Source: Podarcis filfolensis
Lineage: Eukaryota
Direction: 5' to 3' (one strand)
NCBI GenBank assembly: GCA_964270895.1
Contig: OZ185435.1
DNA length: 64,000 bases
The notes below the pieces were generated by a model. It saw only the letters and a list, made by a program, of their open reading frames with translations. It was not told the origin of the DNA and did not search any database. The position numbers and the translations under genes were made by a program. This document shows, piece after piece, positions 4,561 through 59,479 of the stretch. Each line of letters opens with the position of its first letter. Position 1 is the stretch's first letter.

Positions 4561-7500
4561 AGTGCTGAAATAATCAATACACAGTGGTCTAGGTTAGGAA
4601 ATGAAAGCACAAATAATATTTACAGCTATCCTACTGCAGGGGTCCAAAATCAAGTAAATTTGGTGCCTATAAATAAATGGTCAGAATTATTTATTTCTTC
4701 TGATCTATGACAACCCATAGCTGGATGGTCAAGTGTTTGATTGGATTGATAGTTTCTCACCCTTTTAACACAATGGTTGCTTAGGAGATGGGGTTGGTGG
4801 GAGACTCCAGGAACTGGGAAACTCTCACTAACCTAGCCAAAGGTATGTGAAGCAACTGAGTAGAATGGGGTGAGGGAAGGCCATTCTGACCTAATGTTAA
4901 GATGCAGGTCAGGTAGCCAACAGACAAGGAAAGGCTCAGGTGTAGAGGAGAGAGGGGAGATGCCACGGGCAAAGGAAAGGTGTGGTAACCAAGGGGTACT
5001 CAGATGCAGAGCTTCTTCAGAACTACATTCCTATACATATAGCCGCCACTTGCGGCATGTCACTGACAAGACAATGGGGAGGGGCCACAGCTGAAGAGGA
5101 GAATGAAAGAAAAGGAGGAACAGCCAAACAGCATCTAAAGCAGGAAAATGTGGACTGAATCAAGCCAGGTAAGGAAGTTGGGGGCTGGCAATCAACAGCC
5201 CTTATGGTTGCTGTGCATATAGCTGAGTCTTTTTTATGGCCACAGTTCCATACAGAGTACCAGTCTTTGGTGGGAATCTCACTAGTTTGTAAATGATGTT
5301 ATCCGTTTCTGTATGCTTGTTGGGGGAGGATCACACATCATTTAAATAAATTTGAGATACACTTAAATTTAGAAAAGCACCTTCTGATTATTGGGAGTAA
5401 AACAATGACACTTACAACAAGTTATCTGAACCAATGGTAGGTGATAGAAAAGTAACCTGTTCTTTCTTGTCACTGATTCCTTCTCTTTTAGTAACTATGG
5501 GGGCGGGGATTACTTGTTGGTAATCTAAATTACTTCCTTTTAGACTTTATTTCTCTTCCTGCTTCTTTTCCAACTTCAGTCAGCTAGAATCTCCATGATG
5601 GCAATATGTGCTCAGAAAGGCTTTGTTTCTTTGGAGTAATAAACTTTAAGCATTCTTTCTCTTTCAACCAGCAGTCTTAATAGACTATTTATTTCTGTTC
5701 CCTGCTTCAGTATATTCATCAAACTACAAAACTGGTAAGAGCATGGTGCTTCTCTTTCCCCCCTCCCACCACTTTTAAACAGAAATATGTATCAAAGTAT
5801 TAACCAATTATGTTTGTGCATTTCCACATTATACTAGTTACATGTGTTCTTATGGCCACGACTGACTGCTTACAACAAAACACTGATGTACTACAAGTTT
5901 CCTTATGGAAGAATATTGCCAATGCAAGCTGCTGATGGCTTCAGTTCAAAAAAGAAAAGGTATTCTAGTTTACATCTTCCCTCTTCACCCATCCTGCCTG
6001 ACAAGGTTAAGTATTCAGCTGTGAATCTCTTATTAAGACACATGGGGATAGCATAGACATATTGCATGTTTCTTATTCTTAGGAAACAAGGCTACAGTCT
6101 TCTTCATCTTTTGGTTTTATGCTTAGATCACAAATGATATGCAGTCTACTGTGTCCACTTTTACAAAACCAGCTCGATTTGTCCTTAATTTAAAAACATT
6201 CCTGTTTACCTAGGCATTTAATGGATGAAAGATACTGGCAACCTTGACATTATAAGCTGTGAGGCATCAGCTAAGGAGCCTGATCAGGACTAAGAGCAGG
6301 CAGCTGGGCGATCAGGAGACCACTGCACATGAAACCTCAGTACAGAAGTCACCAGAAGAAAGTCCTACATAGGCACCTTTCCCTGAGGAACCTGATGCTT
6401 ACCGTCCCACTTTATCAGTCCAGTGGTGCAAGGAGTTCTCTACAAGGAGATGGAGCCTGGATGAGGTGGTATGGAGAAAGGTTTAAAAGGCCACAGTGTG
6501 CTCCCAGCAAAAGTTGCTCACTTAGAGCTATCTACGGTCCTGCAACTTCCAACCCATCTTGCCTTGCCTCTTTCTCCACAGGATCCAGCACTGGACTAGA
6601 ACCTGACAGCAACATCCATGGGATGCATATTTCCCCCACATATCCCAAAGTACACTGGAGGATGTGGCTTTCCAGTCTTTGGGAGAAAGGCAGAAGCATA
6701 GTGAAACAAAATCATGTCCCTGTTGCTTCTGCTCTGCATAACACCCAAAGCCACTCACTGCCCTAGCCATTACTGAGATTAAAATACCCAAAACAAAAAA
6801 ATCAGATCAATAGAAGTACTTAGAAGATCTAGCAATCTCACATACAGTGGTAAAATGAAGAATACTACTTGTATTGAATCCATTCTGTTTAGTACAATTG
6901 GTCCTTGGCCAATGTTTAAACATCATCAATTCTCGTTTTCAAATATTATAGCGTCCACAATACCTTTTGGAAAATGACTTGTTTCCTATTTATCCCATGA
7001 GGACCAATAGCATCAATCAATGTATGCTAATGTTTGCAAGCATTTCCAGAGATGAAGGCCAGAAAAGAAACACATCGTTCTAAAATAGCAGGGACTGATA
7101 GCAAACCTAGTATAATAACAAGATGCCTATGGATGGTCCTGCTACCTATCCCAAAGCTTGTGATGGGACTTCCATGTGGTTTCTATATATGCGGTAATTC
7201 TTCAGTAAATATGTGTGCAAATAATAAAAGAAAATATGAAAGCTCTTGTTTTTGAAAAAATTAGAAAAAGTTCCAGCCCTGCAGAGAAAGTTGCAGCTTA
7301 CAGCTTCTCTTCTTTTTCTTTTTTTCAGTGGTGGGAATTAGAAAAAGGAATATTATTTCAGCTGCCTATGTCTCAGCATAAGTATCATCACATCATCAAG
7401 GAAATGAGCTCTGTCAATGTACAGAACTTTTAAGTACACATAAATTATAATAGGCTTGATGGATTGATTATGTCTTAATTATGTTGATTATGTCTATTAA

Positions 7501-8359
7501 AATAATTTGGCTTCTGATTATAGTTCCCCCTTGTATACACTATAATTGCAACTCTCTAGAACTATGTTGTTCCTTTTGCTGAAAAGTTATCCTTACAGAA
7601 TGATCCTAAAACAACTATGGACAAGGTCCTGACAGTTAATTATACCAAAAAGGTAATGAAAAGGAACACTATGACATCACGCTTAGCAAAAATCCTTGCA
7701 AGAGTGACCTAATTTTGAATGTGGGGGTAGCATGGAAGAGAAACCAAAAACATTGTACACTTCTACTATTAAAACACACGGTTGTTTAATCTTCCCATTT
7801 GCTTTGTCCTGCTCACCTTTCCCCTCAATTCATTGAATATAATAACATGTATATTGTTCAATATAGGCTTTCAAACTATACAAATAAGTTTCTAGCAGGT
7901 GGGTTGGGCTAGACTTGGTAGGAGCAAAATGACTATTGAACCCTACTTGCCCCAGTCCAAAGGAAACATGTACGTATGGAGTCTGGTCATGTTGCGATTC
8001 TAGACTGGCAATGGTGGCTGGCCGCAGAGAAGAGCGGGTGCAGAGAGCCATTTCAGATGGTAATGTTGTCCTTTCATTGAGGTCTTAACCACACTTACCT
8101 TTACTCCACTCATTCTAGGCATGGCCTGCACCTTAAAGCTCTGTGTCCAAGTTCCCCCGTTTTTTTGCTCCAGAGATTTCCCTGCAACAGCTCGCTCTTT
8201 AAACCTCCATCAGAGCAAGCAGCAACCGGCAGAAAACCCAAACTGACGATGGCTCCGACTGAGTGCTAGTTTGGTGGGGGGAGGAGGATGCTTGGATATG
8301 GAGCTTTTAAGCACAGACCGGTGCCTAGAAAGAGCAGGGCAAAAGATAAGTGTGAATAT

Positions 8360-9540
8360 GCCCAAAGTCGCAATGCCATAATGGAGGCACCTTTAGTTGA
8401 ACATTTTATTTCCCACAAGCATTCAGATAGGTAAAGGGACACCTGACCATTAGGTCCAGTCGTGACCGACTCTGAGGTTGCAGTGCTCATCTCGCTTTAT
8501 TGGCCGAGGGAGCCGGTGTACAGCTTCCGGGTCATGTGGCCAGCATAACTAAGCCACTTCTAGCGAACCAGAGCAGCACACGGAAACGCCGTTTACCTTC
8601 CCACTGGAGCGGTACCTATTTATCTACTTGCACTTTGATGTGCTTTCGAACTGCTAGGTGGGCAGGAGCTGGGACCGAGCAACGGGAGCTCACCCTGTTG
8701 CGGGGATTCGAACCGCTGACCTTCTGATCGGCAAGCTCTAGGCTCTGTGGTTTAACCCACAGCGCCACCCACATTCAGATACTGATTTATTATTCACTGT
8801 TTTATGGGTCAATCATAGGAGAGTTGGTATAAGACAAGATTTGGAACGGCGGTTACGCCAACAAGAAACACGTTTCATCTACATGTTCAACTCTGTTCAT
8901 CTGGGGGGACTGAATTCTGAGTTAGATTTCCATTGTTTTATTTAATTGCATTATCTACCATGATCCACTGACTGGATGGGGTTCTGTTTTCATCTGGTTG
9001 TCAGGCATTCTTGCATGTTGTGCTGTGTCTTTAATTTCCCTTACAGTATATTAGTTTCACCTGTGGCTAACTATATTATATTCTTTACAATTTGTTACTA
9101 GCATCAGTGACTACAGTATCATATGAGCACTGAGCATATGAGCATATACAGTATCATATGAGCATATTTTCTACAGCGTTTATATTTGCTTACATGTAAG
9201 ATTGGGTATGTATTTTAGTTGTACATATTGTATTATGCATTTTATTTTATACAGATGCAGGTTTCGTCGCATGTATATTGTAATTTCAGCTTGTTAAGAA
9301 ATTGAACTGCATCCTTATCGTATTAATTCTTACAAGTCTGGCTGATGAAGAATTGCTCAAGATCAGCTGATGAAGCATTGAACAATCAGTTATTCGGAAC
9401 CTCTGTTCTGGCAATATTTGGTGACAGATTATGTATATATCGAACTTTTGAATTAGTCTACCGCGACTGGTGAAGAAGATTTAGAGACTTTGGTTGTAAT
9501 TTCTGATCATTTGTATTAGTCTATAAATAGGGTTTAGTGC
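8360..9540 (+). mobile_element. Penelope-like element, 5'-truncated: GIY-YIG endonuclease C-terminus plus 3' UTR/pLTR, interrupted by a SINE
   Basis: Removing the SINE and one TSD gives the in-frame EAPLVEHFISHKHSDTDLLFTVLW...LERRLRQQETRFIYMFNSVHLGGLNSELDFHCFI*, a typical PLE ORF C-terminus. It is followed by an AT-rich tail with CTGATGA motifs. The 3' boundary is approximate. Confidence 0.8.
8430..8771 (-). mobile_element. Full-length Sauria (Squam1) SINE
   Basis: tRNA-like head (rc GGGTGGCGCTGTGGGTTAAACC...GGTTCGAATCCCCGC) and (ACCTTT) tail; 10-bp TSD CATTCAGATA (8420-8429, 8772-8781). Confidence 0.95.
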
Positions 9541-10389
9541 CATTGTTATTGGCCATCGTGTTGTGTTATATTGTTCAGCTGGAGCAGCTTCAAAGCATGG
9601 CAAGTTTTTTAAAAAAACGGTACAGGAAGGGCCCACACATCACTTCCTGTGCAATTCTATGCACAAAGTGGCTGCACCCAACAGTACAACACCAGACTCC
9701 AAATTGTATCACAAACTACAATCCATGGATACCAGTCCCTAGATATATAGTTCCAGCTGGGTTCAATTGTTTTGGCCCACTAGAGTGTGTGATGAAAGAC
9801 AAAAAGTGTTATGAGAAGTTTGGAATAGGCTTTTATGAACATAACACCATATAGTGTCATGAAAATCTCTCACCTCTTATTGTTGCCGTATTCCTTGGCT
9901 GTTTATATCCTCCTGCTGAAGATGAGATTAAATAAAGCTGTATGTAAACAAAGCAGATCAGTCATAGGAGCAATCTGCTGTCATTCTGAATTAAATGCAT
10001 GGGTAATCTTACAGCAATTAACTGACTTCTGCTGAGTGATGAAGAGAGCTAATGTCCTGCAAACTGCCTATATAATTCTTTTAAGAAGGAATTCCTTAGG
10101 AGGTGAAATGCTCCATGTCAGTAGCACAGACTTCCAAGATTTTGAATGTTAGTGGAATGTGGTCCTACAACTGCACTAGTGCACACTCAGAATGGACGCA
10201 CAACCAATCTAAACAGTAACATGAGTTAGTTGTACGCTGGATGTACAAACAGATCCCATAATTTGCAAGGCAGACCCCACAGTTTAGCAGTCTTGCTTCC
10301 TCTTATCCTCTCCACTCTTGGAGTTCTGTTGGTCAGGTTTCCTTTGCCCAATTCAGGATGCTCCTTGCAAAGAGGGATAATTTAATTGT

Positions 10390-10750
10390 TTTATGGTCTT
10401 CTAGCCTAACTTTTTGCATGAGTTTCAAGGCAGCAATCTACCAAGGTAGATAAAGCAAAACAACATCGTTTTAAAACAACACCATTAAACACCATAATTA
10501 AAATGGCAGCAGAAAGCTTAACAGTGGTAAAACAAACAAGAATAAGACATAAAGACATGTGGATGTGTGCCAACAACCCAAATAGCATATCGTATACCAT
10601 TTGGAGAATGCTACTTGGTGCTCCAAGCATATATGTTTGGGGTAAGAGTTCCTTGATTTGAATGCCACCACCAAGAAGATTGTCTCTTCCTAATCCAAAT
10701 ACACCTATTGGGATGTGCACCTCCATATAAATCAAAGTAGTAATTAAATT
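10390..10750 (-). mobile_element. Old L2-like 3' end relic
   Basis: On the minus strand, a T-rich 3' UTR ending in gtagattgctgccttgaaactc..., like L2-type tails. Confidence 0.3.
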
Positions 10751-48056: not shown

Positions 48057-49003
48057 CTAAAATGAAATAAAGACAGTAGAGTGAAATAGAACGCCCATAT
48101 TTGGCACCAGTTCAAAACCAGATGCCTGTTGGTTGTGGCTCTTGTCATGACATGATTTTTATATGTTCAGGTCAGAATTCTGGTGAATGTTGACCTTTGC
48201 ATTCAATTCATATAAGGTGAGATTTTCTGGTAAATGTCTGATTCTGTAATGGGAAAATGTTGATAAAATTTCTCTGTTCTCAGCTGCTCTCAGTGGCAAA
48301 TGTTGCTAACGTCAGTTTGCATCTAGAGACATGGCCTTCTGCAAATAGCAGGATTCCTTCCGTTTGTGGAAGAAGCTCTGATCTAGTGGAAAGTTCCACT
48401 GGAGGCGGCGGCAAGGGTGGTGATCTTTGCTGATTCCACTTTCCCTTGGCAGCCCCCACTGCCACCTATCATGCTGTTTCAAAGGGTCTCCCAATCCTCT
48501 GGCTTTTCAGGATCCACAGAAGGCTGAAGGGAGAGTCCGCAAAAATTGTCTCTCCCGCTTCCTCCTGTGACACACCCTGTGAACAGAACTCCACTCATGG
48601 GAGAGCAGGATCCAACCCATGACAATTTTCTAGGATTTCTTACTGGCTAAAAAGATAGTAACAACTGGTAGATGTCAACAGCCACCAAATATGTATAAAT
48701 TATGCTTATTTAACTTTAACTTGTCAAGTCAGTTTTGTTTTAACTCATAATATATAAATGTCTCCATCTTTTAAGCAATGCTTTCACTTCAAGTGATCTG
48801 TTTTTCTGCTTTACACCCATGAGACCCATTTTCTCTCTCTCCCTGACATAAATGGGAATATTGGCAGCAAACTTTGTGACACAATCAGCTTGGGCCTATT
48901 ATTCTCACGCTGTAAACAAAACACAACAATACATGTAAAGTTTTACGATTATTTACTGCTTGCTTCCTAGGACCATAAATATAAGATGTTGAGTAATTAA
49001 TTG

Positions 49004-50227
49004 CTTAAAATTCTACAAGGCAGGCTCAAGCAGTATGCGGACCAAGAACTCCCAGAAGTGCAAGCGGGATTTAGCAGAGGAACCAGAGACCAAATTGCAA
49101 ACATGCGCTGGATTATGGAGAAAGCTAGAGAGTTCCAGAAAGACATCTACTTCTGCTTCATTGACTATGCAAAAGCCTTTGACTGTGTCGACCACAGCAA
49201 ACTATGGCAAGTTCTTAAAGAAATGGGAGTGCCTGATCACCTCATCTGTCTCCTGAGAAATCTCTATGTGGGACAAGAAGCTACAGTTAGAACTGGATAT
49301 GGAACAACTGATTGGTTCAAAATTGGGAAAGGAGTACGGCAAGGCTGTATATTGTCTCCCTGCTTATTTAACTTATATGCAGAATTCATCATGCGAAAGG
49401 CTGGGCTGGATGAATCCCAAGCTGGAATTAAGATTGCCGGAAGAAATATCAACAATCTCAGATATGCAGATGACACAACCTCGATCGCAGAAAGTGAGGA
49501 GGAATTAAAGAGCCTTTCAATGAGGGTGAAAGAGGAGAGCGCAAAATATGGTCTGATCCTCAACACCAAAAAAAATCACTGGTCTCATCACCTCCTGGCA
49601 AATAGAAGGGGAAGAAATGGAGGCAGTGAGAGATTTTACTTTCTTGGGCTCCATGATCACTGCAGATGGAGACAGCACCCACGAAATTAAAAGACGCCTG
49701 CTTCTTGGGAGAAAAGCAATGACAAACCTAGACAGCATCTTAAAAAGCAGAGACGTCACCTTGCCGACAAAGGTCTGTATAGTAAAAGCTATGGTTTTCC
49801 CTGTAGTGATGTATGGAAGTGAGAGCTGGACCATAAAGAAGGCTGATCGCCGAAGAATTGATGCTTTTGAATTATGGTGCTGGAGGAGACTCATGAGAGT
49901 CCCATGGACTGCAAGAAGATCAAACCTATCCATTCTTAAGGAAATCAGCCCTGAGTGCTCACTGGAAGGACAGATCGTGAAGCTGAGGCTCCAATACCTT
50001 GGCCACCTCATGAGAAGAGAAGACTCCCTGGAACAGACCCTGGTGTTGGGAAAGATTGAGGGCACAAGGAGAAGGGGACGACAGAGGATGAGATGGTTGG
50101 ATAGTGTTCTCAAAGCTACCAGCATGAGTTTGACCAAACTGCGGTAGGCAGTGGAAGACAGGAGTGCCTGGTGTGCTCTGGTCCATGGGGTCACGAAGAG
50201 TCGGACACGACTAAACGACTAAACAAC
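49004..50227 (+). mobile_element. Bov-B LINE, 5'-truncated (RT domain to tail)
   Basis: FIDYAKAFDCV, GVRQGCILSP and YADD motifs; small deletion/frameshift near 49570; tail acgactaaacgactaaacaac; 9-bp TSD AATTAATTG (48995-49003, 50228-50236). Confidence 0.97.
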
Positions 50228-50557: not shown

Positions 50558-51487
50558 TGTTCAGGCATTAGCTTGCACCACACCGACTAAAGAAGCATCT
50601 TCTACTTGGAAAGTGATGTCTCCTTCCTTCTCTCCTTGAACTAACTTAGTTCTACTGTTCTCATCAGTGCCTGGGCTAATACAATCTGCCCTGAGATTGG
50701 TAATGATGAATCGGGTCCTCCCCCTTAATGAGGGCACGGAATGCGGTGAGACCTGGAAAACCGACACCCTGTGTTGTGGGTGGGTACGTTTGGACAGCCA
50801 CAACACCTGATTGGTAGGTCCCTCAAAGCTGGGTACAATCTGGCCAATGGGACGCAGTCCGAATGGTTCAAGGGACCTATTTATGCCCATGCACGTGACC
50901 CAGAGCTTCCTCTTTTGGGGCGTGCATTTGGAACACCCGCCCACCTCTCCCTACTTTTAAGGCTTTGCTCTTGACCTTGCTATGCCGTCGTGTGTCGTCT
51001 GTCATTGGGACAGGGGCACGGCAGGAATTTCCCCCACTTGGCTGATTGGCTGTTGCCATTTGGGTTTTGCCTGCAGCGTAGCAAATCGTCACAACTTGTA
51101 AGGTTGCAGATAGGCTCTGGTTCAGGTGATAGGGATGGGAGAACGCTCTCGCCATCCCTATGTGAAGGGTATTCCATTAAACCAATCCAGGGACTCAATA
51201 GTTTGGTCAACCCCTGAGAGGGGGTTGTGCCCATGCCTGAGTCCAGGGGGACATTTGGGTGGAGTTAGCCCGTTCCTGGCTTTCCGCTTATCCAGGTGTT
51301 CACCCTTGGCTGACCTATGCTGGAACCCTGGGTCAGCGCTACCTGCATGGCAGGGAGCTAGTTGAACCAGAGCCTATGCAACCAGTCACTTTCTGTAATC
51401 AATAAAGTTGTGGCCTAAATTCTGCCAAAAACCAAAATTTGAGTCATGTGTGAATTTATTTAGGGGGGAGGTTTCTGGGTCTGAACA
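50558..51487 (+). mobile_element. Solo LTR-like element (930 bp)
   Basis: Inverted termini TGTTCAGGC / GTCTGAACA; CCAAT/ATTGG boxes (~50809, 50835), TATA-like cctatttatgc (~50877), AATAAA 51401-51406; CpG-rich; flanks AGTC / TGCA, so no TSD. Confidence 0.8.
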
Positions 51488-51535
51488 TGCAAAGGACAGA
51501 CTAGAACTTCTTAAAATAAATAAAAATAAATAGAG

Positions 51536-52524
51536 AGAGAAGAAGGTTCCCTCTCTACCCAAGGGATTCTTTGTTCTCCAAATATCAACTAGGTCCAAAT
51601 TGTCGGTCATCTCAAAAAAGGTTTTTGGTAGTCTACCATCCTTGGTGACTACCTGTCTTTGTGCCTTGTCCATATTTGTAGATACCACTCCATTCATATC
51701 CCCCATCAAGATCACATTGTAGTCTAAGTAGTCCATCAAGGTCTCATGCAACTTTTTTAAAAATTCAGATTTCCCCTCATTTGGTGCATAAACTCCTACT
51801 ATCAGAAATTTCTCTCCTTGTGTTTGAATTTCAATTGCCACAAATCTTCCTTGGTCATCTTTAAAAATAAATTTCGGTGATAGACTCTCCTTTGCATAGA
51901 TCACTACTCCTCTTTTTTTAACTTTGTCCGATGAGATAAACTCTTAACCCAATCTTTTGTTAATCAATACTTTTCTATGTAGCCTTATCACATGTGTTTC
52001 CTGTAGACAAATCTAGTCCAATTGTTCCTTTTTTAGTAAATGAAACACTTTTTTCCTCTTCTGGGGGGAGATAAGACCATTTGTATTCCAGCTTGTGATG
52101 GGATGGTGAGCTGCTTGTGCGTAAAATCCTGATCCCTCAGAGTTTGGCTAAGTTCCCAAACCTCTGTCTGTGATGGAGCTCCTTAAGCATGGCTCCATCA
52201 ATCGCTCGTTGAATCGGACAGTGGGCGTTTACGGAACTTCTTCCAGCATAAAAGCTCCTTAACGGAAACACGTCTTCTGGACTCTCGGCGTGACAGTTTC
52301 CGCCGAGGAGTGGGTGTTCCTACGGGAGGTCCTGAAACCCCCCCACTGTTCTCGCTTGAAGTATCTCTGAGCTCTCCCTCCTACTCACTTTCCCTTGGAA
52401 CTCCACTTCTCCCCCTGCTGGTCCCCTCCTCCGCTGAGTGGTCTCTCTCACCCTCCATGAGCCCTTTCACCTCCTTTGTCTCAGATGACAGTTCCCTGAC
52501 ACAGCTTAATAGTTGCAGAGCCAT
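51536..52524 (-). pseudogene. L1 ORF2 N-terminus (APE endonuclease), inverted, interrupted by an LTR and two stops
   Basis: ATG at 52524: MALQLLS|WNTNGL..KRKKVFHLLKKEQLD*ICLQETH...LG*EF...VGVYAPN...GDMN...DIWR. ORF1 C-terminus (...VIPPTEQE*, stop 52565-52567) sits 40 nt upstream. Confidence 0.9.
52093..52501 (-). mobile_element. Solo LTR (409 bp) inserted in the L1 ORF2 start
   Basis: TG...CA ends; 5-bp TSD CAGCT (52088-52092, 52502-52506); removal restores ATGGCTCTGCAACTATTAAGCTGGAATACAAATGG. Confidence 0.92.
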
Positions 52525-52653
52525 GATGTAATTACTTTGCTTTTCCTCCGACTGCGCCCAGGGTTTATTCTTGTTCTGTCGGTGGTATCACTTTTTCTAA
52601 GCTATCCAATCCAAAAGGTAGTGTTGCTATGTCTAATATTCCTCTTTTCAGTG

Positions 52654-55600
52654 CTTCTTCTCTGAAGCCAAAATGACATGGACAAGAATTGACCAAATTT
52701 GGATAACTAGAGGACTGGCTCCAAAGACTAGAAAAGTGGAAATTTGTCCTAAAACTTGTTCTGACCATAATGCTGTGAAAATGGAGATGAAACTAACACC
52801 AACTGGCTCCTTCAGATGGAGGATGAATGACACCTTGTTTAGGGACGAAGAAGTGACCAAGAAGGCCCAAAAAACCTTGAGAGATTATTTTGAGATAAAT
52901 ATGAATACTAGTGTTGAAAAAAGAGTAATCTGGGACGCAAGCAAGGCAGTTATGAGAGGGTTTCTGATACAACAGAATGCAATAAAGAAGAGAACTCAAA
53001 ATGAGAAAAAAGATAAAATTTTTGATAAAATAAAAGAAGGCGAGAGGAAATTGAGAGCGAAACCAAAATCGCAAGAGATTCTGAGAGAAATAAAGTTACA
53101 TCAAGTACAATATATGAAAATGATGAACCAGGAAATAGAGTGGAAAATCAAACAGATGAGACAAAAGACATTTGAATCGGCCAACAAATGTGGGAAATTG
53201 TTAGCTTGGCAAATGAAGAGAAGGCAAAAACTCAATACTATTACAAATTTGGAAGTGGAAGGAAAGAATATACAGAATCCAGCTGAGATTAGAAAATGTT
53301 TCCAGAGGTATTTTAAACAACTATATACACAAGGGCCACAGAAAGAAATTGATATAGATCAATTTTTGAAATTAAATGGACTACAAAAAAATCTCTCAGA
53401 AAAATAAGTTGATGTTGAACTATAAGATAACTGAACAGGAGGTAGAAGGTGCCATCCAGAATATGCAATTGGGTAAATCTCCAGGACCGGATGGCTTAAC
53501 TTCAAGATATTATAGATCCTTGAAAGAGTGGATAATACAACCATTAAAGGAAGTTTGTAATGGAATTTTGGAAGGGAAAAAAGCACCAGAGTCGTGGAAG
53601 GAAGCTTATATTACACTTATGCCGAAAACTGAGTCTGAGAAGACACAACTTAAGAATTACCGCCCCATATCTCTGCTTAATGTGGATTATAAATTTTTTG
53701 CAGATATTTTGGCTAAAAGACTAAAAAAAGGGCTAGTGGAGGAGATACATAAAGACCAAGCAGGCTTTCTCCCGGGCAGACATTTGTCTGACAATACGAG
53801 AAATATAATTAATCTTTTAGAAAAACTACAAGTAAACATCAATACTAAAGCAGTTTTGATATTTATAGACGCGGAGAAAGCCTTTGACAATATTTCTTGG
53901 AGTTTTATGAAGAAGAATCTTCAGGGGATGGGGGTTGGTCAAGGTTTTGGAAACGGTATAGGTGCAATTTATTCAGAACAAAAGGCCAAACTAATTGTTA
54001 ACAATGTGGTGACGGAGGAATTTAAGATAGAGAAAGGGACACGACAAGGTTGCCCAATTTCCCCATTGCTCTTTATTTCGGTCCTGGAGGTTCTCCTAAA
54101 TATGATCAGAAGGGACCAACTGGTTAAAGGTATACAAGTCGGAGCCAAACAGTACAAATTGAAAGCATTTGCAGATGATCTAGTACTGACATTACAGGAG
54201 CCAGAATCTAGTACTAAAAGAGTATTGGAATTGATTCAAGAATTTGGTCAGGTTGCAGGATTCAAGTTGAACAAGTTAAAAACTAAGGTTCTAGAGAAAA
54301 ATCTAACACCGATTGAGAAAGAGAGGTTTCAGAAGGGGACAGGCTTGACATTGGTTAAGAAAGTAAAATACCTGGGGGTTAATATGACTGCTAAGAACGT
54401 GAATTTATTTAAAGATAACTATGAAAAATGTTGGTCAGAAGTGAAAAAGGATTTAGAAATATGGTCAAATTTGAAGCTTTCCTTGCTAGGCCGTATTGCT
54501 GCTATAAAAATGAATGTATTGCCAAGAATGTTGTTTTTGTTTCAATCATTGCAAATTATGAATAAAATGGACTGTTTCAAGAAGTGGCAGAGAGATATTT
54601 CTAGATTTGTCTGGCAGGGCAAGAAGCCCAGAATAAAATTTAAAATACTAACCGATGCAAAAGAAAGAGGTGGATTTGCCCTGCTAGACCTTAAACTTTA
54701 CTATGAATCAGCTGCATTTTGCTGGCTGAAAGAATGGCTGCTTCTTGAGAACACAGACATTTTGGATTTAGAAGGTTTCAATAATGTATTTGGGTGGCAT
54801 GCATATTTGTGGTATGATAAGGTCAAAGCGCATAAAGCATTTAAAAACCATATTGTCAGGAAAGCATTGTTCAATGTATGGATAAGATATAAAGACTTAC
54901 TTGAAAATAAAACCCCAAGGTGGTTATCACCGATGGAAGCGAAGGCTCAAAAAAAGCTCAATATGGAGGCCAAATGGCCGAAATATTGGGAGATTTTGGA
55001 ACAAGAAGGAGATAAATTGAAATTGCAGAGCTTTCAGAAACTAAAAGACAAAGTGCGAGATTGGCTTCATTATTATCAAATAAGGGAGGCTTACAATTTG
55101 GACAAGAAAATTGGCTTCCAGGTGGAAAAATCAAAATTGGAAACAGAACTGTTAGATCCCAAAACTAAGATATTATCAAGAATGTATAACTTGCTGCTGA
55201 AATGGAATACTCAGGATGAAACGGTAAAATCTGCTATGATAAAATGGGCACAAGATGTCGGACATAACATTATGTTGGCTGACTGGGAACAGTTATGGAC
55301 CACAGGTATGAAATTTACGGCATGTAATGCCTTAAGAGAGAATATTATGAAAATGATATACAGGTGGTACATGACACCAGTCAAGCTTGCAAAAATCTAT
55401 CATTTGCCCGATAATAAATGTTGGAAATGTAAAGAAAATGAAGGTACATTCTTTCACCTTTGGTGGACGTGCCCAAAGATTAAGGCTTTCTGGGAGATGA
55501 TCTATAATGAAATGAAAAAGGTATTTAAATATACCTTCCTGAAGAAACCAGAGGCCTTTCTCCTGGGCATGGTCGGCCAATTGGTGCTAAAGAAGGATAG

Positions 55601-55826
55601 AACTTTCTTTATGTATGCTACAACAGCAGCAAGAATACTTACTGCAAAGTATTGGAAGACACAAGATCTACCCACCCTGGAAGAATGGCAGATGAAGGTG
55701 ATGAACTATATGGAACTGGCGGAAATGACTGGCAGAATCCGAGACCAGGGAGAAGAGTCGGTGGAAGAAGATTGGAAGAAATTTAAAGACTATTTACAGA
55801 AAAACTGCAAAATTAATGAATGTTAG
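52654..55826 (+). pseudogene. L1 ORF2 main part (EN C-terminus, RT, CCHC knuckle), one +1 frameshift
   Basis: ORFs 52673-53407 and 53376-55826 fuse if one A is removed from A7 at 53385-53391; NYRPISLLNVDYK, GTRQGCPISP, FADD, CWKC-x8-H-x4-C. Confidence 0.95.
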
Positions 55827-56629
55827 AATGATGTCGGAATGAAGTTAAGTGGTTTTAGCAGCAATGTTATAAAGGAGTATGTAAAAATGGATTGTTAATA
55901 GGTGAGAATGTAAAGTTATAATATATTAAGATAAAGGATTAAGATAAAAACAAAGAGGGAAAGGATTTGCTGAAATAACCAACTGAACTGGAATACAAAA
56001 AAGGGAGGTGTGAGGAGGTCAGGGAAACAAGTAAATGAAAGATAAGATATGGAAAGATTGATTTGTTTTTAATTGTTTTTATTTTCCTGTATTTTGTATT
56101 TTCTCTTCTTTTTTTCTTAATTTGTAACCTTTTTTTGAAACTTTAATAAATATCTTTAAAAAAATAAAAGTAAAAATAAATACATCATAATGAATAGTCG
56201 GCAGCATAGAATGTAAGAGGCTATCGATGGCTGCATCACACCCCCCAGAATTGTTTAGCTTTCGCACAGCTGCTCAAGCTCCTCTCATGAGGCAGCTGCA
56301 TCACAAATAGGCTGGTGCCCCACTAATGCTGCAGCACCAGTGACTGTGAGGTATTGCACTGGAATGGTGTCAGATCCCATTTATGATCATTAGGTGATGA
56401 AATGTTCTCTCACTCAGGAACTGAAAGCCTAGCTCTTCATTCTCTGAGCAGTTACACCGCAGGAGCTTATGGGCTAGGTGCATTACAAAAGAATGTGAAG
56501 ATCCAAATCACCTTGTCAAAAACAGGTCTTCCCAAGTGGTTTTATGAATCAAGTTGTGACATCCAGGTTTTTCAGTCTAACATTTCCAGATTGAAAAGAT
56601 TATTGCATTTTTATTGTATTGTTTAAGAT

Positions 56630-56826
56630 CCATAGAATCATAGACTTGTAGAGTTGGAACGGACTGCAAGGGACATCTTGTCCAGCCCCCTGCAATGCAG
56701 GAATCTCAATTAAAGCACCTATGACAGATGGCCACCCAACTTCTGATTAAATACCTCCAGTGAAGCAGAGTCCCCCACCTTCCAAAAGAGTCTGTTCCAC
56801 TATCATACACCTCTTACTGTCAGAAA
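56630..56826 (-). mobile_element. Older CR1 3' end
   Basis: catagaatcatagacttgtagagttggaacgg...ccccctgcaatgcaggaatc...ctcttactgtcag. Confidence 0.85.
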
Positions 56827-57871: not shown

Positions 57872-59479
57872 TAGTGGGGGGTGGGGAGTATTTGATCCCC
57901 TGCTAAATTTGCCAATTTGCCCTCTGATGAAGAAATGACCAGTCCATAATTTTAATGGTAGGTTTATTGTAGCTGTGAGAGACAGAAGAACAACAGGAAA
58001 ACCTCCAGAAACCCAAGAGACAAAAGTCAGATTGATATGCATTATAATGAGTGAAATAAGTATTTGATCCCTTTGCAAAAGATGACTGTACTTGGTGGCA
58101 AAACCCTTGTTGGCAATTACAGAGGTCAGACGTTTCTTGTAGGTGGCCACCACCAGGTTTGCACACATCTTAGGAAGTATTTTGTCCCACTCCTCTTTGC
58201 AAATCCTCTCCAAGTCAGTAAGATTTCGAGGCTGATGTGTAGCTACTCGAACCTTCAGCTCCCTCCACAGATTTTTGATGGGATGAAGGTCTGGAGACTG
58301 GCTAGGCTACTCCAGGACCTTAATGTGCTTCTTCTTGAGCCACTCCTTTGTTGCCTTGGCCGTGTGTTTTGGGTCATTGTCATGCTGGAATAACCATCCT
58401 CGACCCATTTTCAATGCCTTGGCTGAGGGAAGGAGGTACTCACCCAAGATTTGACAATACATGATCCCGTCTATCGTCCCTTTGATGTGGTGAAGGTTTC
58501 CTGTCCCCTTAGCAGAAAAACACCCCCAAAGCATAATATGTGCCCCTCCATGTTTGACGGTGGGGATGGTGTTCTTGGGGTCGTAGGCAGCATTCCTCCT
58601 TCTCCAAACACGGCGAGTTGAGTTGATGCCAAAGAGCTCAATTTTGGTCTCATCTGACGACAACACTTTCACCCAGTTCTCCTCTGGGTCATTCAGCTGT
58701 GCATTGGCAAACTGCAGACGGGGCTGTACATGTGCTGTCTTGACCTTGCAGGCTCTGCAAGATCTCAGTCCTTCACAGCGTAGTGTGTTACCAACTGTTT
58801 TCATGGTGACTATGGTCCCAGCTGCCCTGAGATCATTGACAAGTTCCCATCATGTAGTTCTGGGCTGCTTCATCACCGTTCTCATGATAATTGCAACTCC
58901 ATGAGATGAGATCTTGCATGGAGCCCCAGAACGAGGGAGGTTGACAGTTATTTTGTGTTTCTTCCATTTGCAAATTATTGCACCAACTGTTGTCACCTTT
59001 TCACCAAGCTGCTTGGCAATAGTCTTGTAGCCCAGTCCAGCCTTGTGCAGGTCTACAATCTTGTCCCTGACATCCTTGGACAGCTCTTTGGTCTTGGTCA
59101 TGGTGGCTACTTTGGAATCTGCTGGATTGATTGCTTCTGTCGACAGGTGTCTTTTGTACAGGTACTGTAATGAGCTGGGATTATAGGTAAGACCTCTCCC
59201 TTACAGCAGGTGCTTCTAATCTCAGCTCATTACATACAGTGAAGATACCAGGTAGCCCGACATCTGGCTGATTGATAGGGGATCAAATACATATTTCACT
59301 CATTATAATGCACATCAATCTCTGACTTTTGTCTTCTGGGTTTCTGGAGTTTTTCCTGTTGTTCTTCTGTCTCTCACGGCTACAATAAACCTACCATTAA
59401 AATTATGGACTAGTCATTTCTTCGTCAGAGGGCAAACGGGCAAATTTATCAAGGGAACAAATACTTCCCCCCCTCACTG
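57872..59479 (-). mobile_element. Full-length Tc1 (DD34E) DNA transposon with ~210-bp IR/DR ends
   Basis: TA-flanked; TIRs (c)AGTGGGGGG..AGTATTTGATCCC / mirror ...CCCTCACTG; inner DR AAGTATTTGATCCC at ~58057. Confidence 0.96.
58085..59101 (-). pseudogene. Tc1 transposase pseudogene
   Basis: [20 protein letters not shown] (paired-like HTH), GRPR-like PRSGAP, SDETK, HDND; one frame with stops at 58850 and 58307; catalytic E replaced by K (codon 58274-58276). Confidence 0.95.

What the first reader, a model, noticed from the sequence alone, without database searches (positions are those of the whole stretch)
51513..56182. Twin-priming (5'-inverted) L1 insertion in a lizard
Seen: the ORF2 endonuclease is cut at GTFFS. 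Its 5' part (EN N-terminus plus ORF1 end) sits reversed at 51533-52653, with the 3'-most breakpoint abutting the left flank. The 3' part resumes at exactly the same codons on the plus strand (52654), with ~10 bp CTTCTTCTCT present at both breakpoints. The target is TT/AAAA with a matching 12-bp TSD. Established: this geometry is what the twin-priming model predicts, characterised mainly for mammalian L1. Inference: squamate L1 uses the same mechanism, and this is a clean specimen. I cannot say whether squamate examples are already reported.
Basis: partly seen in the sequence, partly recalled or inferred. Interest (0 to 1): 0.72.

Follow-up and report, generated by a model that had tools for sequence, protein, structure and literature searches.

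The report
Twin-primed inverted L1 in lizard
A lacertid-lizard L1 jumping gene was inserted in one event with its front 0.7 kb flipped, the "twin priming" accident known from mammals; it is real but not pristine, because a 408-base solo LTR of another retroelement sits inside the flipped part.

Summary
The geometry is real. An L1-clade element lies inside one exact 12-bp target-site duplication (51521-32 and 56171-82). Its 5' arm is inverted (51536-52653, minus strand) and its 3' arm is in sense (52654-56157, then a 13-nt A-rich tail).

Both arms break at the same FFS codons of the endonuclease, and exactly 10 nt is present at both breakpoints. Human ORF2p, Podarcis muralis ORF2 proteins, a P. 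lilfordi L1 copy and reads from uninverted family copies all show the arms are contiguous in L1.

Public contigs carry the filled left junction in one organism. In two more diverged organisms a single contig appears to bridge both flanks, which I read as an empty site.

Twin priming is the best explanation (about 0.85).

- The host is a lacertid, not Anolis.
- 408 nt of the "inverted L1" (52094-52501) is a nested gypsy-type solo LTR with a 5-bp duplication, interrupting ORF2 after codon 7.
- Only 28 codons precede an in-frame stop where ORF1 should end, and their ORF1 identity is positional only.
- Three extra nucleotides sit at the 5' junction.
- TT/AAAA lies 8 nt upstream of the exact duplication.

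This is a known mechanism in a new host lineage. Interest is modest.

The parts
51521..51532 (+). 5' copy of the target-site duplication, TAAAAATAAATA. The A-rich target extends back to 51513, preceded by TT at 51511-12.
   Evidence: the exact 12-mer also lies at 56171-82; 3 matches in the window against 0.02 expected.
51533..51535 (.). Three extra nucleotides (GAG) between the duplication and the inverted L1 arm.
   Evidence: they match neither the right flank (CATC...) nor the L1 sequence that follows the breakpoint in the plus arm or in L004.
51536..52093 (-). Inverted L1 arm, part 1: the rest of ORF2 codon 8 through codon 193 (endonuclease up to GTFFS). Two in-frame stops at 52013-15 and 51944-46.
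   Evidence: aligns to human ORF2p 66-195, P. muralis ORF2 residues up to 192/193, and L004 7019-7579 at 77.2% identity; both stops are private to this copy.
51536..51545 (-). Copy 1 of the 10-nt L1 stretch duplicated at the inversion point (reverse complement of CTTCTTCTCT).
   Evidence: (joints with 9-10 shared letters).
52094..52501 (-). Nested solo LTR of a Ty3/gypsy chromovirus-type element, 408 nt. It runs TG...CA in the same orientation as the L1 arm and is flanked by a 5-bp duplication, AGCTG (52089-93 and 52502-06).
   Evidence: HMMER E=1.3e-10 to the C-terminal end of P0203. P0203 has SH3_Tf2-1 and Chromo domains; tblastn to P0203 residues 373-474, E=2.6e-22; a polypurine tract lies directly before the homologous TGTCAGGG in L005; an organism-B contig joins 52088->52502, skipping 413 nt, and read depth rises about 5-fold in 52082-52475..
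52502..52653 (-). Inverted L1 arm, part 2: ORF2 codons 1-7 plus 2 nt of codon 8 (ATG at 52522-24, MALQLLS), a 40-nt spacer, a stop codon at 52565-67, and the last 28 codons of an upstream ORF (52568-52651), presumed to be ORF1.
   Evidence: the N-terminus matches P. muralis ORF2 (MALQFLSWN, MSLQLLSWN) and L004. The spacer length compares with 45, 42 and 86 nt in L004, L003 and L002. ORF1 identity is positional only.
52654..56157 (+). Sense L1 arm: ORF2 from the FFS codons through RT and the CCHC C-terminus (stop at 55824-26), then the 3' UTR. One frameshift near 53385-53394 in an A-run.
   Evidence: RVT_1 1e-36; 81-93% amino-acid identity to P. muralis ORF2; L004 7571-10734 at 77.6% identity.
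52654..52663 (+). Copy 2 of the duplicated 10 nt, CTTCTTCTCT.
56158..56170 (+). A-rich tail, AAAAAAATAAAAG.
   Evidence: related copies L001 and L004 end with an AATAAA-type signal, about 10 nt, then A12-A16.
56171..56182 (+). 3' copy of the target-site duplication.

Best explanation
This is a single L1 retrotransposition event resolved by twin priming.

1. The L1 endonuclease nicked the bottom strand in an A-rich target.
2. The first cDNA was primed on the poly(A) tail and copied the RNA back to the FFS codons of the endonuclease region.
3. After second-strand cleavage 12-20 nt downstream, the free top-strand 3' end primed a second cDNA inside the same RNA, at those same codons.
4. The second cDNA ran about 705 nt towards the RNA's 5' end, through the ORF2 start into the end of ORF1.
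5. The first cDNA overran the second priming site by 10 nt, which produced the duplication.
6. The two cDNAs were joined at 52653/52654.

The result is: duplication, 3 extra nt, inverted arm, sense arm, A-tail, duplication. The insertion was non-functional from the start.

A gypsy-type retroelement later integrated after ORF2 codon 7 and collapsed to a solo LTR. Alternatively, the template RNA already carried that LTR.

SHOWN: the anatomy, the contiguity of the arms in L1 coordinates, the duplications, and the nature of the LTR.
INFERRED: the order of enzymatic steps, the timing of the LTR, and the empty or filled state in other organisms.
For: - The arms are opposite in orientation and adjacent in L1 coordinates, with a 10-nt overlap. 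This shows against human ORF2p, full-length P. muralis ORF2 (the inverted arm ends at residue 192/193 and the plus arm starts at 190/191), and the P. lilfordi copy L004.
- Uninverted family copies read straight through the breakpoint with a single copy of the 10 nt. joints: 3 contigs in X15, 2 in X2, and 10-12 raw reads in X24. X4 also has a loose end before 52655.
- The 3'-most L1 position of the inverted arm faces the 5' flank. Only the sense arm has a tail. One exact 12-bp duplication encloses everything.
- Both arms are equally distant from references: 77.2% versus 77.6% to L004, and 78-83% versus 75-85% to P. muralis proteins.
- A laid piece of an X15 contig spans at least 51465-51549, which is the filled left junction, on a different haplotype (C>G at 51507).
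- In X2 and X4 the same contig depth (109 and 9.79) covers both 51507 and 56187 onward, so I infer an empty site. Their right flanks are about 5% diverged.
- Small duplications at inversion junctions and 10-20 bp duplications are typical of twin-primed human L1s (PMC5668948, PMC4245944).
Against: - There is no microhomology at the 5' junction. Instead there are 3 extra nucleotides, the rare class in primates (3.9% with extra nucleotides; 95% with microhomology; PMC2912911).
- The exact duplication starts at AA/TAAAAA rather than at the consensus TT/AAAA, which lies 8 nt upstream.
- The internal junction 52653/52654 was not seen in independent data.
- The empty site was inferred from contig depths, not read directly. 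The tool masked 56155-56186 and dropped joints there.
- No reference closer than about 7% in protein or 23% in DNA was available, so 'same subfamily, same RNA' is consistent but not proven.
- The disabling load looks uneven: 2 stops in 193 codons against 1 frameshift in 1053. That is not significant (P about 0.07 by my own calculation).
Confidence: 0.85

Rival explanations
1. An ordinary 5'-truncated L1 insertion whose first 0.7 kb was inverted later by breakage and repair, or by recombination.
For: Repair of staggered breaks can leave short inverted duplications like the 10 nt seen here. A later event, the LTR insertion, did hit this arm.
Against: One inversion breakpoint would have to coincide, to within 3 nt, with the element's 5' end at the duplication. 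No inverted repeats flank the segment to drive recombination.
Confidence: 0.05
2. Two independent L1 insertions in opposite orientation, or one nested in the other.
For: L1 copies are numerous here (depths), and nested elements occur in this very locus (the LTR).
Against: The inverted arm has no 3' end, no tail and no duplication of its own. Its 3' break coincides with the sense arm's 5' break to within 10 nt in an element of several kb. The single duplication encloses both arms.
Confidence: 0.03
3. An assembly artefact, with a mis-joined or flipped contig inside a repeat.
For: The internal junction was not independently observed. L1 interiors are repetitive, and short-read contigs break there.
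Against: The filled left junction (flank, duplication, extra nucleotides, inverted arm) is present in a contig of another sample on a different haplotype (row 51507). An artefact would not create a matching flanking duplication plus a precise 10-nt duplication at homologous L1 positions.
Confidence: 0.03
4. A variant of the main model: the 408-nt LTR was already in the template RNA. An ORF2-dead L1 copy carrying a solo LTR would then have been mobilised in trans and twin-primed.
For: The LTR lies in the same orientation as the L1 arm. At 7 of its 408 positions every read in at least one run differs from this copy (52207, 52209, 52210, 52340, 52357, 52373, 52374), which may be more than expected for a very recent insertion. 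First-stage notes report abundant non-autonomous 'half-L1' elements in this genome, so trans-mobilisation may be common (unchecked). The L1 insertion itself looks young: absent from two related organisms, with an open 816-codon stretch.
Against: L1 cis-preference makes mobilisation of an ORF2-dead RNA rare (established for mammalian L1). An LTR-free family copy exists (joint 52088->52502). No second copy with the L1/LTR junction was found, though this could not be searched genome-wide.
Confidence: 0.25

Closest known systems
[quoted passage not shown]
   Same: An inverted 5' arm and a sense 3' arm that are adjacent in L1 coordinates. A small duplication at the inversion point. One poly(A) tail. 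One duplication of 10-20 bp. An A-rich endonuclease-type target.
   Different: The host is a lacertid lizard, and the L1 family is only distantly related to mammalian L1 (E about 1e-17 to 4e-25 to human ORF2p). There are 3 extra nucleotides instead of microhomology at the 5' junction. A nested solo LTR sits in the inverted arm.
LINE retrotransposition assays in human HeLa and chicken DT40 cells (Yamaguchi et al. 2014, PMC4245944)
   Same: Inversions in those assays go with duplications of 10-20 bp, as here (12, or 20/22).
   Different: In those assays 5' inversions arose essentially only with human L1 in human cells, and none with L1 in chicken cells. Here a native L1 in a sauropsid host shows the structure.
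Inverted snRNA/L1 chimeras attributed to twin priming (Doucet et al. 2015, PMC4476161)
   Same: A second reverse transcription primed from the top-strand nick.
   Different: Those involve a second RNA species. Here both arms come from L1, and the foreign 408 nt is a separate LTR integration with its own 5-bp duplication, not a template switch.
Another twin-primed L1 reported by this scan in the same genome (s1-333215, followed up)
   Same: Same genome, same class of event.
   Different: That copy is described as nearly full length with a 187-nt sense tail. I did not examine it, so it is not independent support.

Membership tests
L1-clade LINE | ORF2 with an N-terminal APE-type endonuclease, a reverse transcriptase and a C-terminal cysteine-rich motif | tested here: met
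   RVT_1 at 1e-36; the endonuclease and linker align to human ORF2p 66-195 and 193-436; a CWKC...HLWWTC motif near the C-terminus; best hits are Podarcis L1 ORF2 proteins.
L1-clade LINE | ORF1 immediately upstream of ORF2 | tested here: inconclusive
   28 open codons and a stop lie 40 nt before the ORF2 ATG. They show no detectable similarity to ORF1 of L002, L003 or L004, and no Pfam hit. ORF1 C-terminal tails are not conserved between these families.
Twin-primed (5'-inverted) L1 insertion | Two arms of one element in opposite orientation, with the 5' arm inverted and its 3'-most position facing the 5' flank | tested here: met
Twin-primed (5'-inverted) L1 insertion | Arms adjacent in element coordinates, with only a small deletion, insertion or duplication at the inversion point | tested here: met
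   A 10-nt duplication.
Twin-primed (5'-inverted) L1 insertion | A single target-site duplication around the composite and a single 3' tail | tested here: met
   An exact 12-bp duplication, a 13-nt A-rich tail at the sense arm only, and no tail at the inverted arm's end.
Twin-primed (5'-inverted) L1 insertion | Microhomology between the target's top-strand end and the internal priming site | tested here: not met
   Three non-matching nucleotides (GAG) intervene. This feature is frequent (95% in primates, PMC2912911) but not obligatory.
Twin-primed (5'-inverted) L1 insertion | Endonuclease-type first-strand nick site (TTTT/AA on the bottom strand) | tested here: inconclusive
   A perfect TT/AAAA lies at 51511-16, but the exact duplication begins 8 nt later (AA/TAAAAA). 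The two fit only if the duplication is 20/22 nt with a 2-nt indel.
Twin-primed (5'-inverted) L1 insertion | Both arms derive from one RNA molecule | tested here: inconclusive
   Equal distance to references (77.2% versus 77.6%). No close family copy was available.
Twin-primed (5'-inverted) L1 insertion | An empty site with one copy of the duplicated stretch in genomes lacking the insertion | tested here: inconclusive
   Inferred from identical contig depth on both flanks in X2 and X4. The contig letters were not shown, and joints at 56155-56186 were masked.
Solo LTR of a Ty3/gypsy (chromovirus-type) retroelement | TG...CA termini and a 4-6 bp target duplication | tested here: met
   TGTCAG...ATCACA, flanked by AGCTG twice. 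The uninterrupted ORF2 start is seen in L004, in P. muralis proteins and in an X2 contig.
Solo LTR of a Ty3/gypsy (chromovirus-type) retroelement | Homology to the 3' LTR of an element with gypsy-type pol, starting right after the polypurine tract | tested here: met
   P0203 has SH3_Tf2-1 and Chromo domains. Its last about 100 residues align from LTR nucleotide 2. The purine run GGGGAGGAGGTGGA precedes the homologous start in L005.

The most novel reading that the evidence does not exclude
The template was an ORF2-dead L1 RNA that already carried the gypsy solo LTR. It would have been mobilised in trans by another L1 and twin-primed, in a lineage where the insertion is recent enough to be absent from two related organisms and may still be segregating. 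Together with the dozen twin-priming-like structures flagged in this genome (L1, Sauria SINE, BovB, U6 chimeras; unchecked notes), this would make lacertids a natural system for asking whether 5' inversion depends on host or on element, the question raised by the human-versus-chicken cell assays.
Probability: 0.25. Interest if true: 0.5.

Novelty: new member of a known kind. Interest (0 to 1): 0.35.

Why it matters
Twin priming has been characterised almost entirely for mammalian L1. Cell-culture work found 5' inversions only for human L1 in human cells and none in chicken cells, and concluded that both host and element matter (PMC4245944).

A well-documented natural 5' inversion of a native L1 in a squamate shows that a sauropsid germ line can produce this outcome, with a duplication length in the same 10-20 bp range.

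One specimen proves little about frequency. Its value is as a verified example for a genome-wide count. The nested LTR is a caution for anyone using this copy as a 'clean' reference.

Tried and rejected
1. The 560 nt upstream of the endonuclease as ORF1 end. Rejected for 52094-52501:
- no Pfam hit;
- no similarity to ORF1 of three related lacertid L1 families by blastn, tblastn or tblastx;
- frameshift-tolerant alignments scored no better than shuffled queries (z from -1.1 to 2.0).
An eye-match of LKRGIL...LPFGL to the ORF1 motif LKKNGILYRWEFPEG scores below the null and was dropped.

2. The foreign piece as a small RNA or SINE head. There is no tRNA and no Rfam family. A SNORD105 hit at E=0.25 is chance.

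3. The foreign piece as a template switch or 5' transduction during retrotransposition. I considered this after and rejected it, because the piece has TG...CA ends, a 5-bp duplication, and exact restoration of the ORF2 reading in LTR-free copies.

4. Other copies of the family inside the window: none.

5. Full-length same-family DNA:
- P0006 and P0017 are not on record.
- L001 is 5'-truncated.
- L004 gave a 77% relative only.

6. An orthologous site via a neighbouring host gene. The neighbouring ORFs are transposable elements, so this route was closed.

All comparisons were pairwise with natural copies.
Full report
WHAT IS THERE

The block 51513-56182 is an L1-clade LINE insertion.

The plus strand from 52654 reads FFSEAKMTWTRID... 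and continues through the linker. One frameshift lies in an A-run near 53385-53394. After it comes an open 816-codon stretch with RVT_1 (1e-36) and a cysteine-rich C-terminus, ending at 55826. A 3' UTR follows and ends at 56157, then a 13-nt A-rich tail (56158-70).

The minus strand of 51536-52093 encodes the endonuclease N-terminal part, ending ...GREGTFFS.

Against solved structures, the inverted piece aligns to human ORF2p residues 66-195. The plus piece starts at residue 193. The two arms therefore meet at the same FFS codons.

THE HOST IS A LACERTID

The best ORF2 relatives are Podarcis muralis proteins at 81-93% identity. Anolis proteins reach only 42-46%.

CONTIGUITY OF THE ARMS

- In full-length P. 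muralis ORF2 proteins the inverted arm ends at residue 192/193 and the sense arm begins at 190/191. Identities are similar for both arms.
- In an uninverted P. lilfordi copy (L004) the arms map to 7019-7579 and 7571-10734, at 77.2% and 77.6% identity.
- Exactly 10 nt (CTTCTTCTCT) is duplicated, at 52654-63 and reverse-complemented at 51536-45.
- Public data give independent evidence. Contigs of organisms A and B and 10-12 raw reads of organism I join 51536 to 52664, or 51546 to 52654, on opposite strands with 9-10 shared letters. This is what uninverted family copies look like when laid on this locus.
- Organism C contigs show the expected upstream L1 sequence as a loose end before 52655.

ENDS OF THE INSERTION

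The 12-mer TAAAAATAAATA lies at 51521-32 and 56171-82. It occurs 3 times in the window against 0.02 expected.

Between the left copy and the inverted arm are 3 nucleotides (GAG) that match nothing.

The consensus nick site TT/AAAA is at 51511-16, 8 nt before the exact duplication. It fits only if the duplication is an imperfect 20/22 nt and the tail is about 3 nt. Related copies have A12-A16 tails, so I keep the 12-bp reading as the conservative one.

THE UNEXPECTED PART

The 560 nt of the inverted block upstream of the endonuclease has no ORF1 signal. This holds even though L004 carries a normal ORF1 that ends 45 nt before ORF2.

An exhaustive HMMER search with the 60-residue piece 52201-52380(-) hit the extreme C-terminus of P0203 (E=1.3e-10). 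P0203 is a gypsy-type integrase tail with SH3_Tf2-1 and Chromo domains. Over 100 residues the match has E=2.6e-22 and ends at the same stop.

The evidence for a solo LTR:
- The homologous stretch starts at TGTCAGGG, and in the P0203 contig (L005) a polypurine tract directly precedes that motif.
- In the window the stretch is 408 nt (52094-52501), runs TG...CA, and is flanked by AGCTG on both sides.
- Outside it, the L1 reading is restored. ORF2 codons 1-7 (MALQLLS, ATG at 52522-24) lie before it and ...WNTNGL after it. This matches MALQFLSWN and MSLQLLSWN of P. muralis, and L004.
- An organism-B contig joins 52088 to 52502, skipping exactly the LTR plus one duplication copy (413 nt).
- Read depth rises about 5-fold over 52082-52475.

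It is therefore a nested solo LTR in the same orientation as the L1 arm.

The true L1 content of the inverted arm is about 705 nt:
- 28 codons and a stop of the upstream ORF (52565-52651), presumed to be ORF1 by position only;
- a 40-nt spacer;
- ORF2 codons 1-193.

PRESENCE AND ABSENCE

In one search, 'from_end' is the distance to the nearer end of the laid piece. I checked this on rows 56263 and 56496.

- **Organism A (X15):** the piece covering 51507 extends at least to 51549, so it carries the filled left junction. It has a C>G difference there, and its right flank is 1.5% diverged from the window. It is a different haplotype from the window's, though the run could still come from the sample that was assembled.
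- **Organisms B and C (X2, X4):** their right flanks are about 5% diverged. The contig depth at 51507 (109 and 9.79) equals that of the right-flank contig, whereas in X15 the two depths differ (49.9 and 71.2). One short contig (509 and 545 nt) therefore appears to bridge both flanks, which I read as an empty site.

The empty-site reading is an inference. The tool masked 56155-56186 and dropped joints there.

The X15 right-flank contig begins exactly at the first base of the duplication. That would fit a graph branch, meaning heterozygosity, but this is unresolved.

MECHANISM

Every geometric prediction of twin priming is met. A small duplication at the inversion point and a 10-20 bp flanking duplication are typical (PMC5668948, PMC4245944).

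The atypical feature is extra nucleotides instead of microhomology at the 5' junction. In primates only 3.9% of 5'-inverted L1s have extra nucleotides (PMC2912911).

The rivals need coincidences or are contradicted by the data:
- later inversion;
- two independent insertions;
- assembly artefact.

Whether the LTR entered after the L1 insertion or was already in the template RNA is open.

STATE OF THE COPY

There are two stop codons in the inverted arm (52013-15 and 51944-46). Both are private to this copy, because every other family read or contig differs at those positions. There is one frameshift in the sense arm, plus the LTR interruption.

LITERATURE

In the held library, papers that mention twin priming together with lizards cite it only for truncation or for snRNA chimeras. 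I found no report of a 5'-inverted squamate L1. Much of the literature is not held, so this is not proof of absence.

First-stage notes of this scan list a dozen twin-priming-like structures in the same genome, one of them followed up. Two notes describe solo-LTR families with an ORF that starts at LTR nucleotide 2. That description matches the LTR found here. These notes are leads, not evidence.

VERDICT

This is a real, lineage-specific, twin-priming-type L1 insertion in a lacertid. The mechanism is known and the host lineage is new. The specimen is not clean.

Noticed in passing
window 52094-52501 (minus strand); L005 1209-1518: The solo LTR carries an open frame from LTR nucleotide 2 that encodes the last 100 or so residues of the gypsy-type Pol (45% identity to P0203, ending at the same stop). 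In this retroelement group pol therefore runs through the polypurine tract into the 3' LTR. Two first-stage notes of this scan describe the same kind of LTR-borne ORF elsewhere in the genome.
   Followed up: partly
window 55234-55824: Read depth in the roughly 1x raw-read run is 650-1190 per strand, against 12-33 over the endonuclease region. The last 600 nt of ORF2 is shared with a much more abundant element. This fits the 2.1-kb 'half-L1' family that first-stage notes report in this genome.
   Followed up: no
window 50900-51433 and 56613-56800; ORF 49001-49687: Both outer flanks are high-copy repeats (depth 300-400 per strand). An RVT_1-bearing ORF of another LINE lies at 49.0-49.7 kb on the plus strand. 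The L1 landed in a unique A-rich stretch of about 70-100 nt just downstream of that repeat.
   Followed up: no
window 58310-58804 (minus strand): A 165-codon ORF has a weak Tc3-type transposase HTH match (E about 1e-3). It is probably a Tc1/mariner remnant.
   Followed up: no
P0098, P0125 (database proteins): Public annotations name L1-derived sequences as host proteins. An Anolis 'vesicle transport protein GOT1B isoform X1' aligns over 99% of the query ORF2 fragment, and a Zootoca 'GPR157 isoform X1' contains an L1 ORF1-like region. These are likely gene-model chimeras.
   Followed up: no
L001 6990-10328 (P. lilfordi): A related L1 copy is 5'-truncated at a position only about 116 nt downstream of this element's inversion point. 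This is probably coincidence.
   Followed up: no
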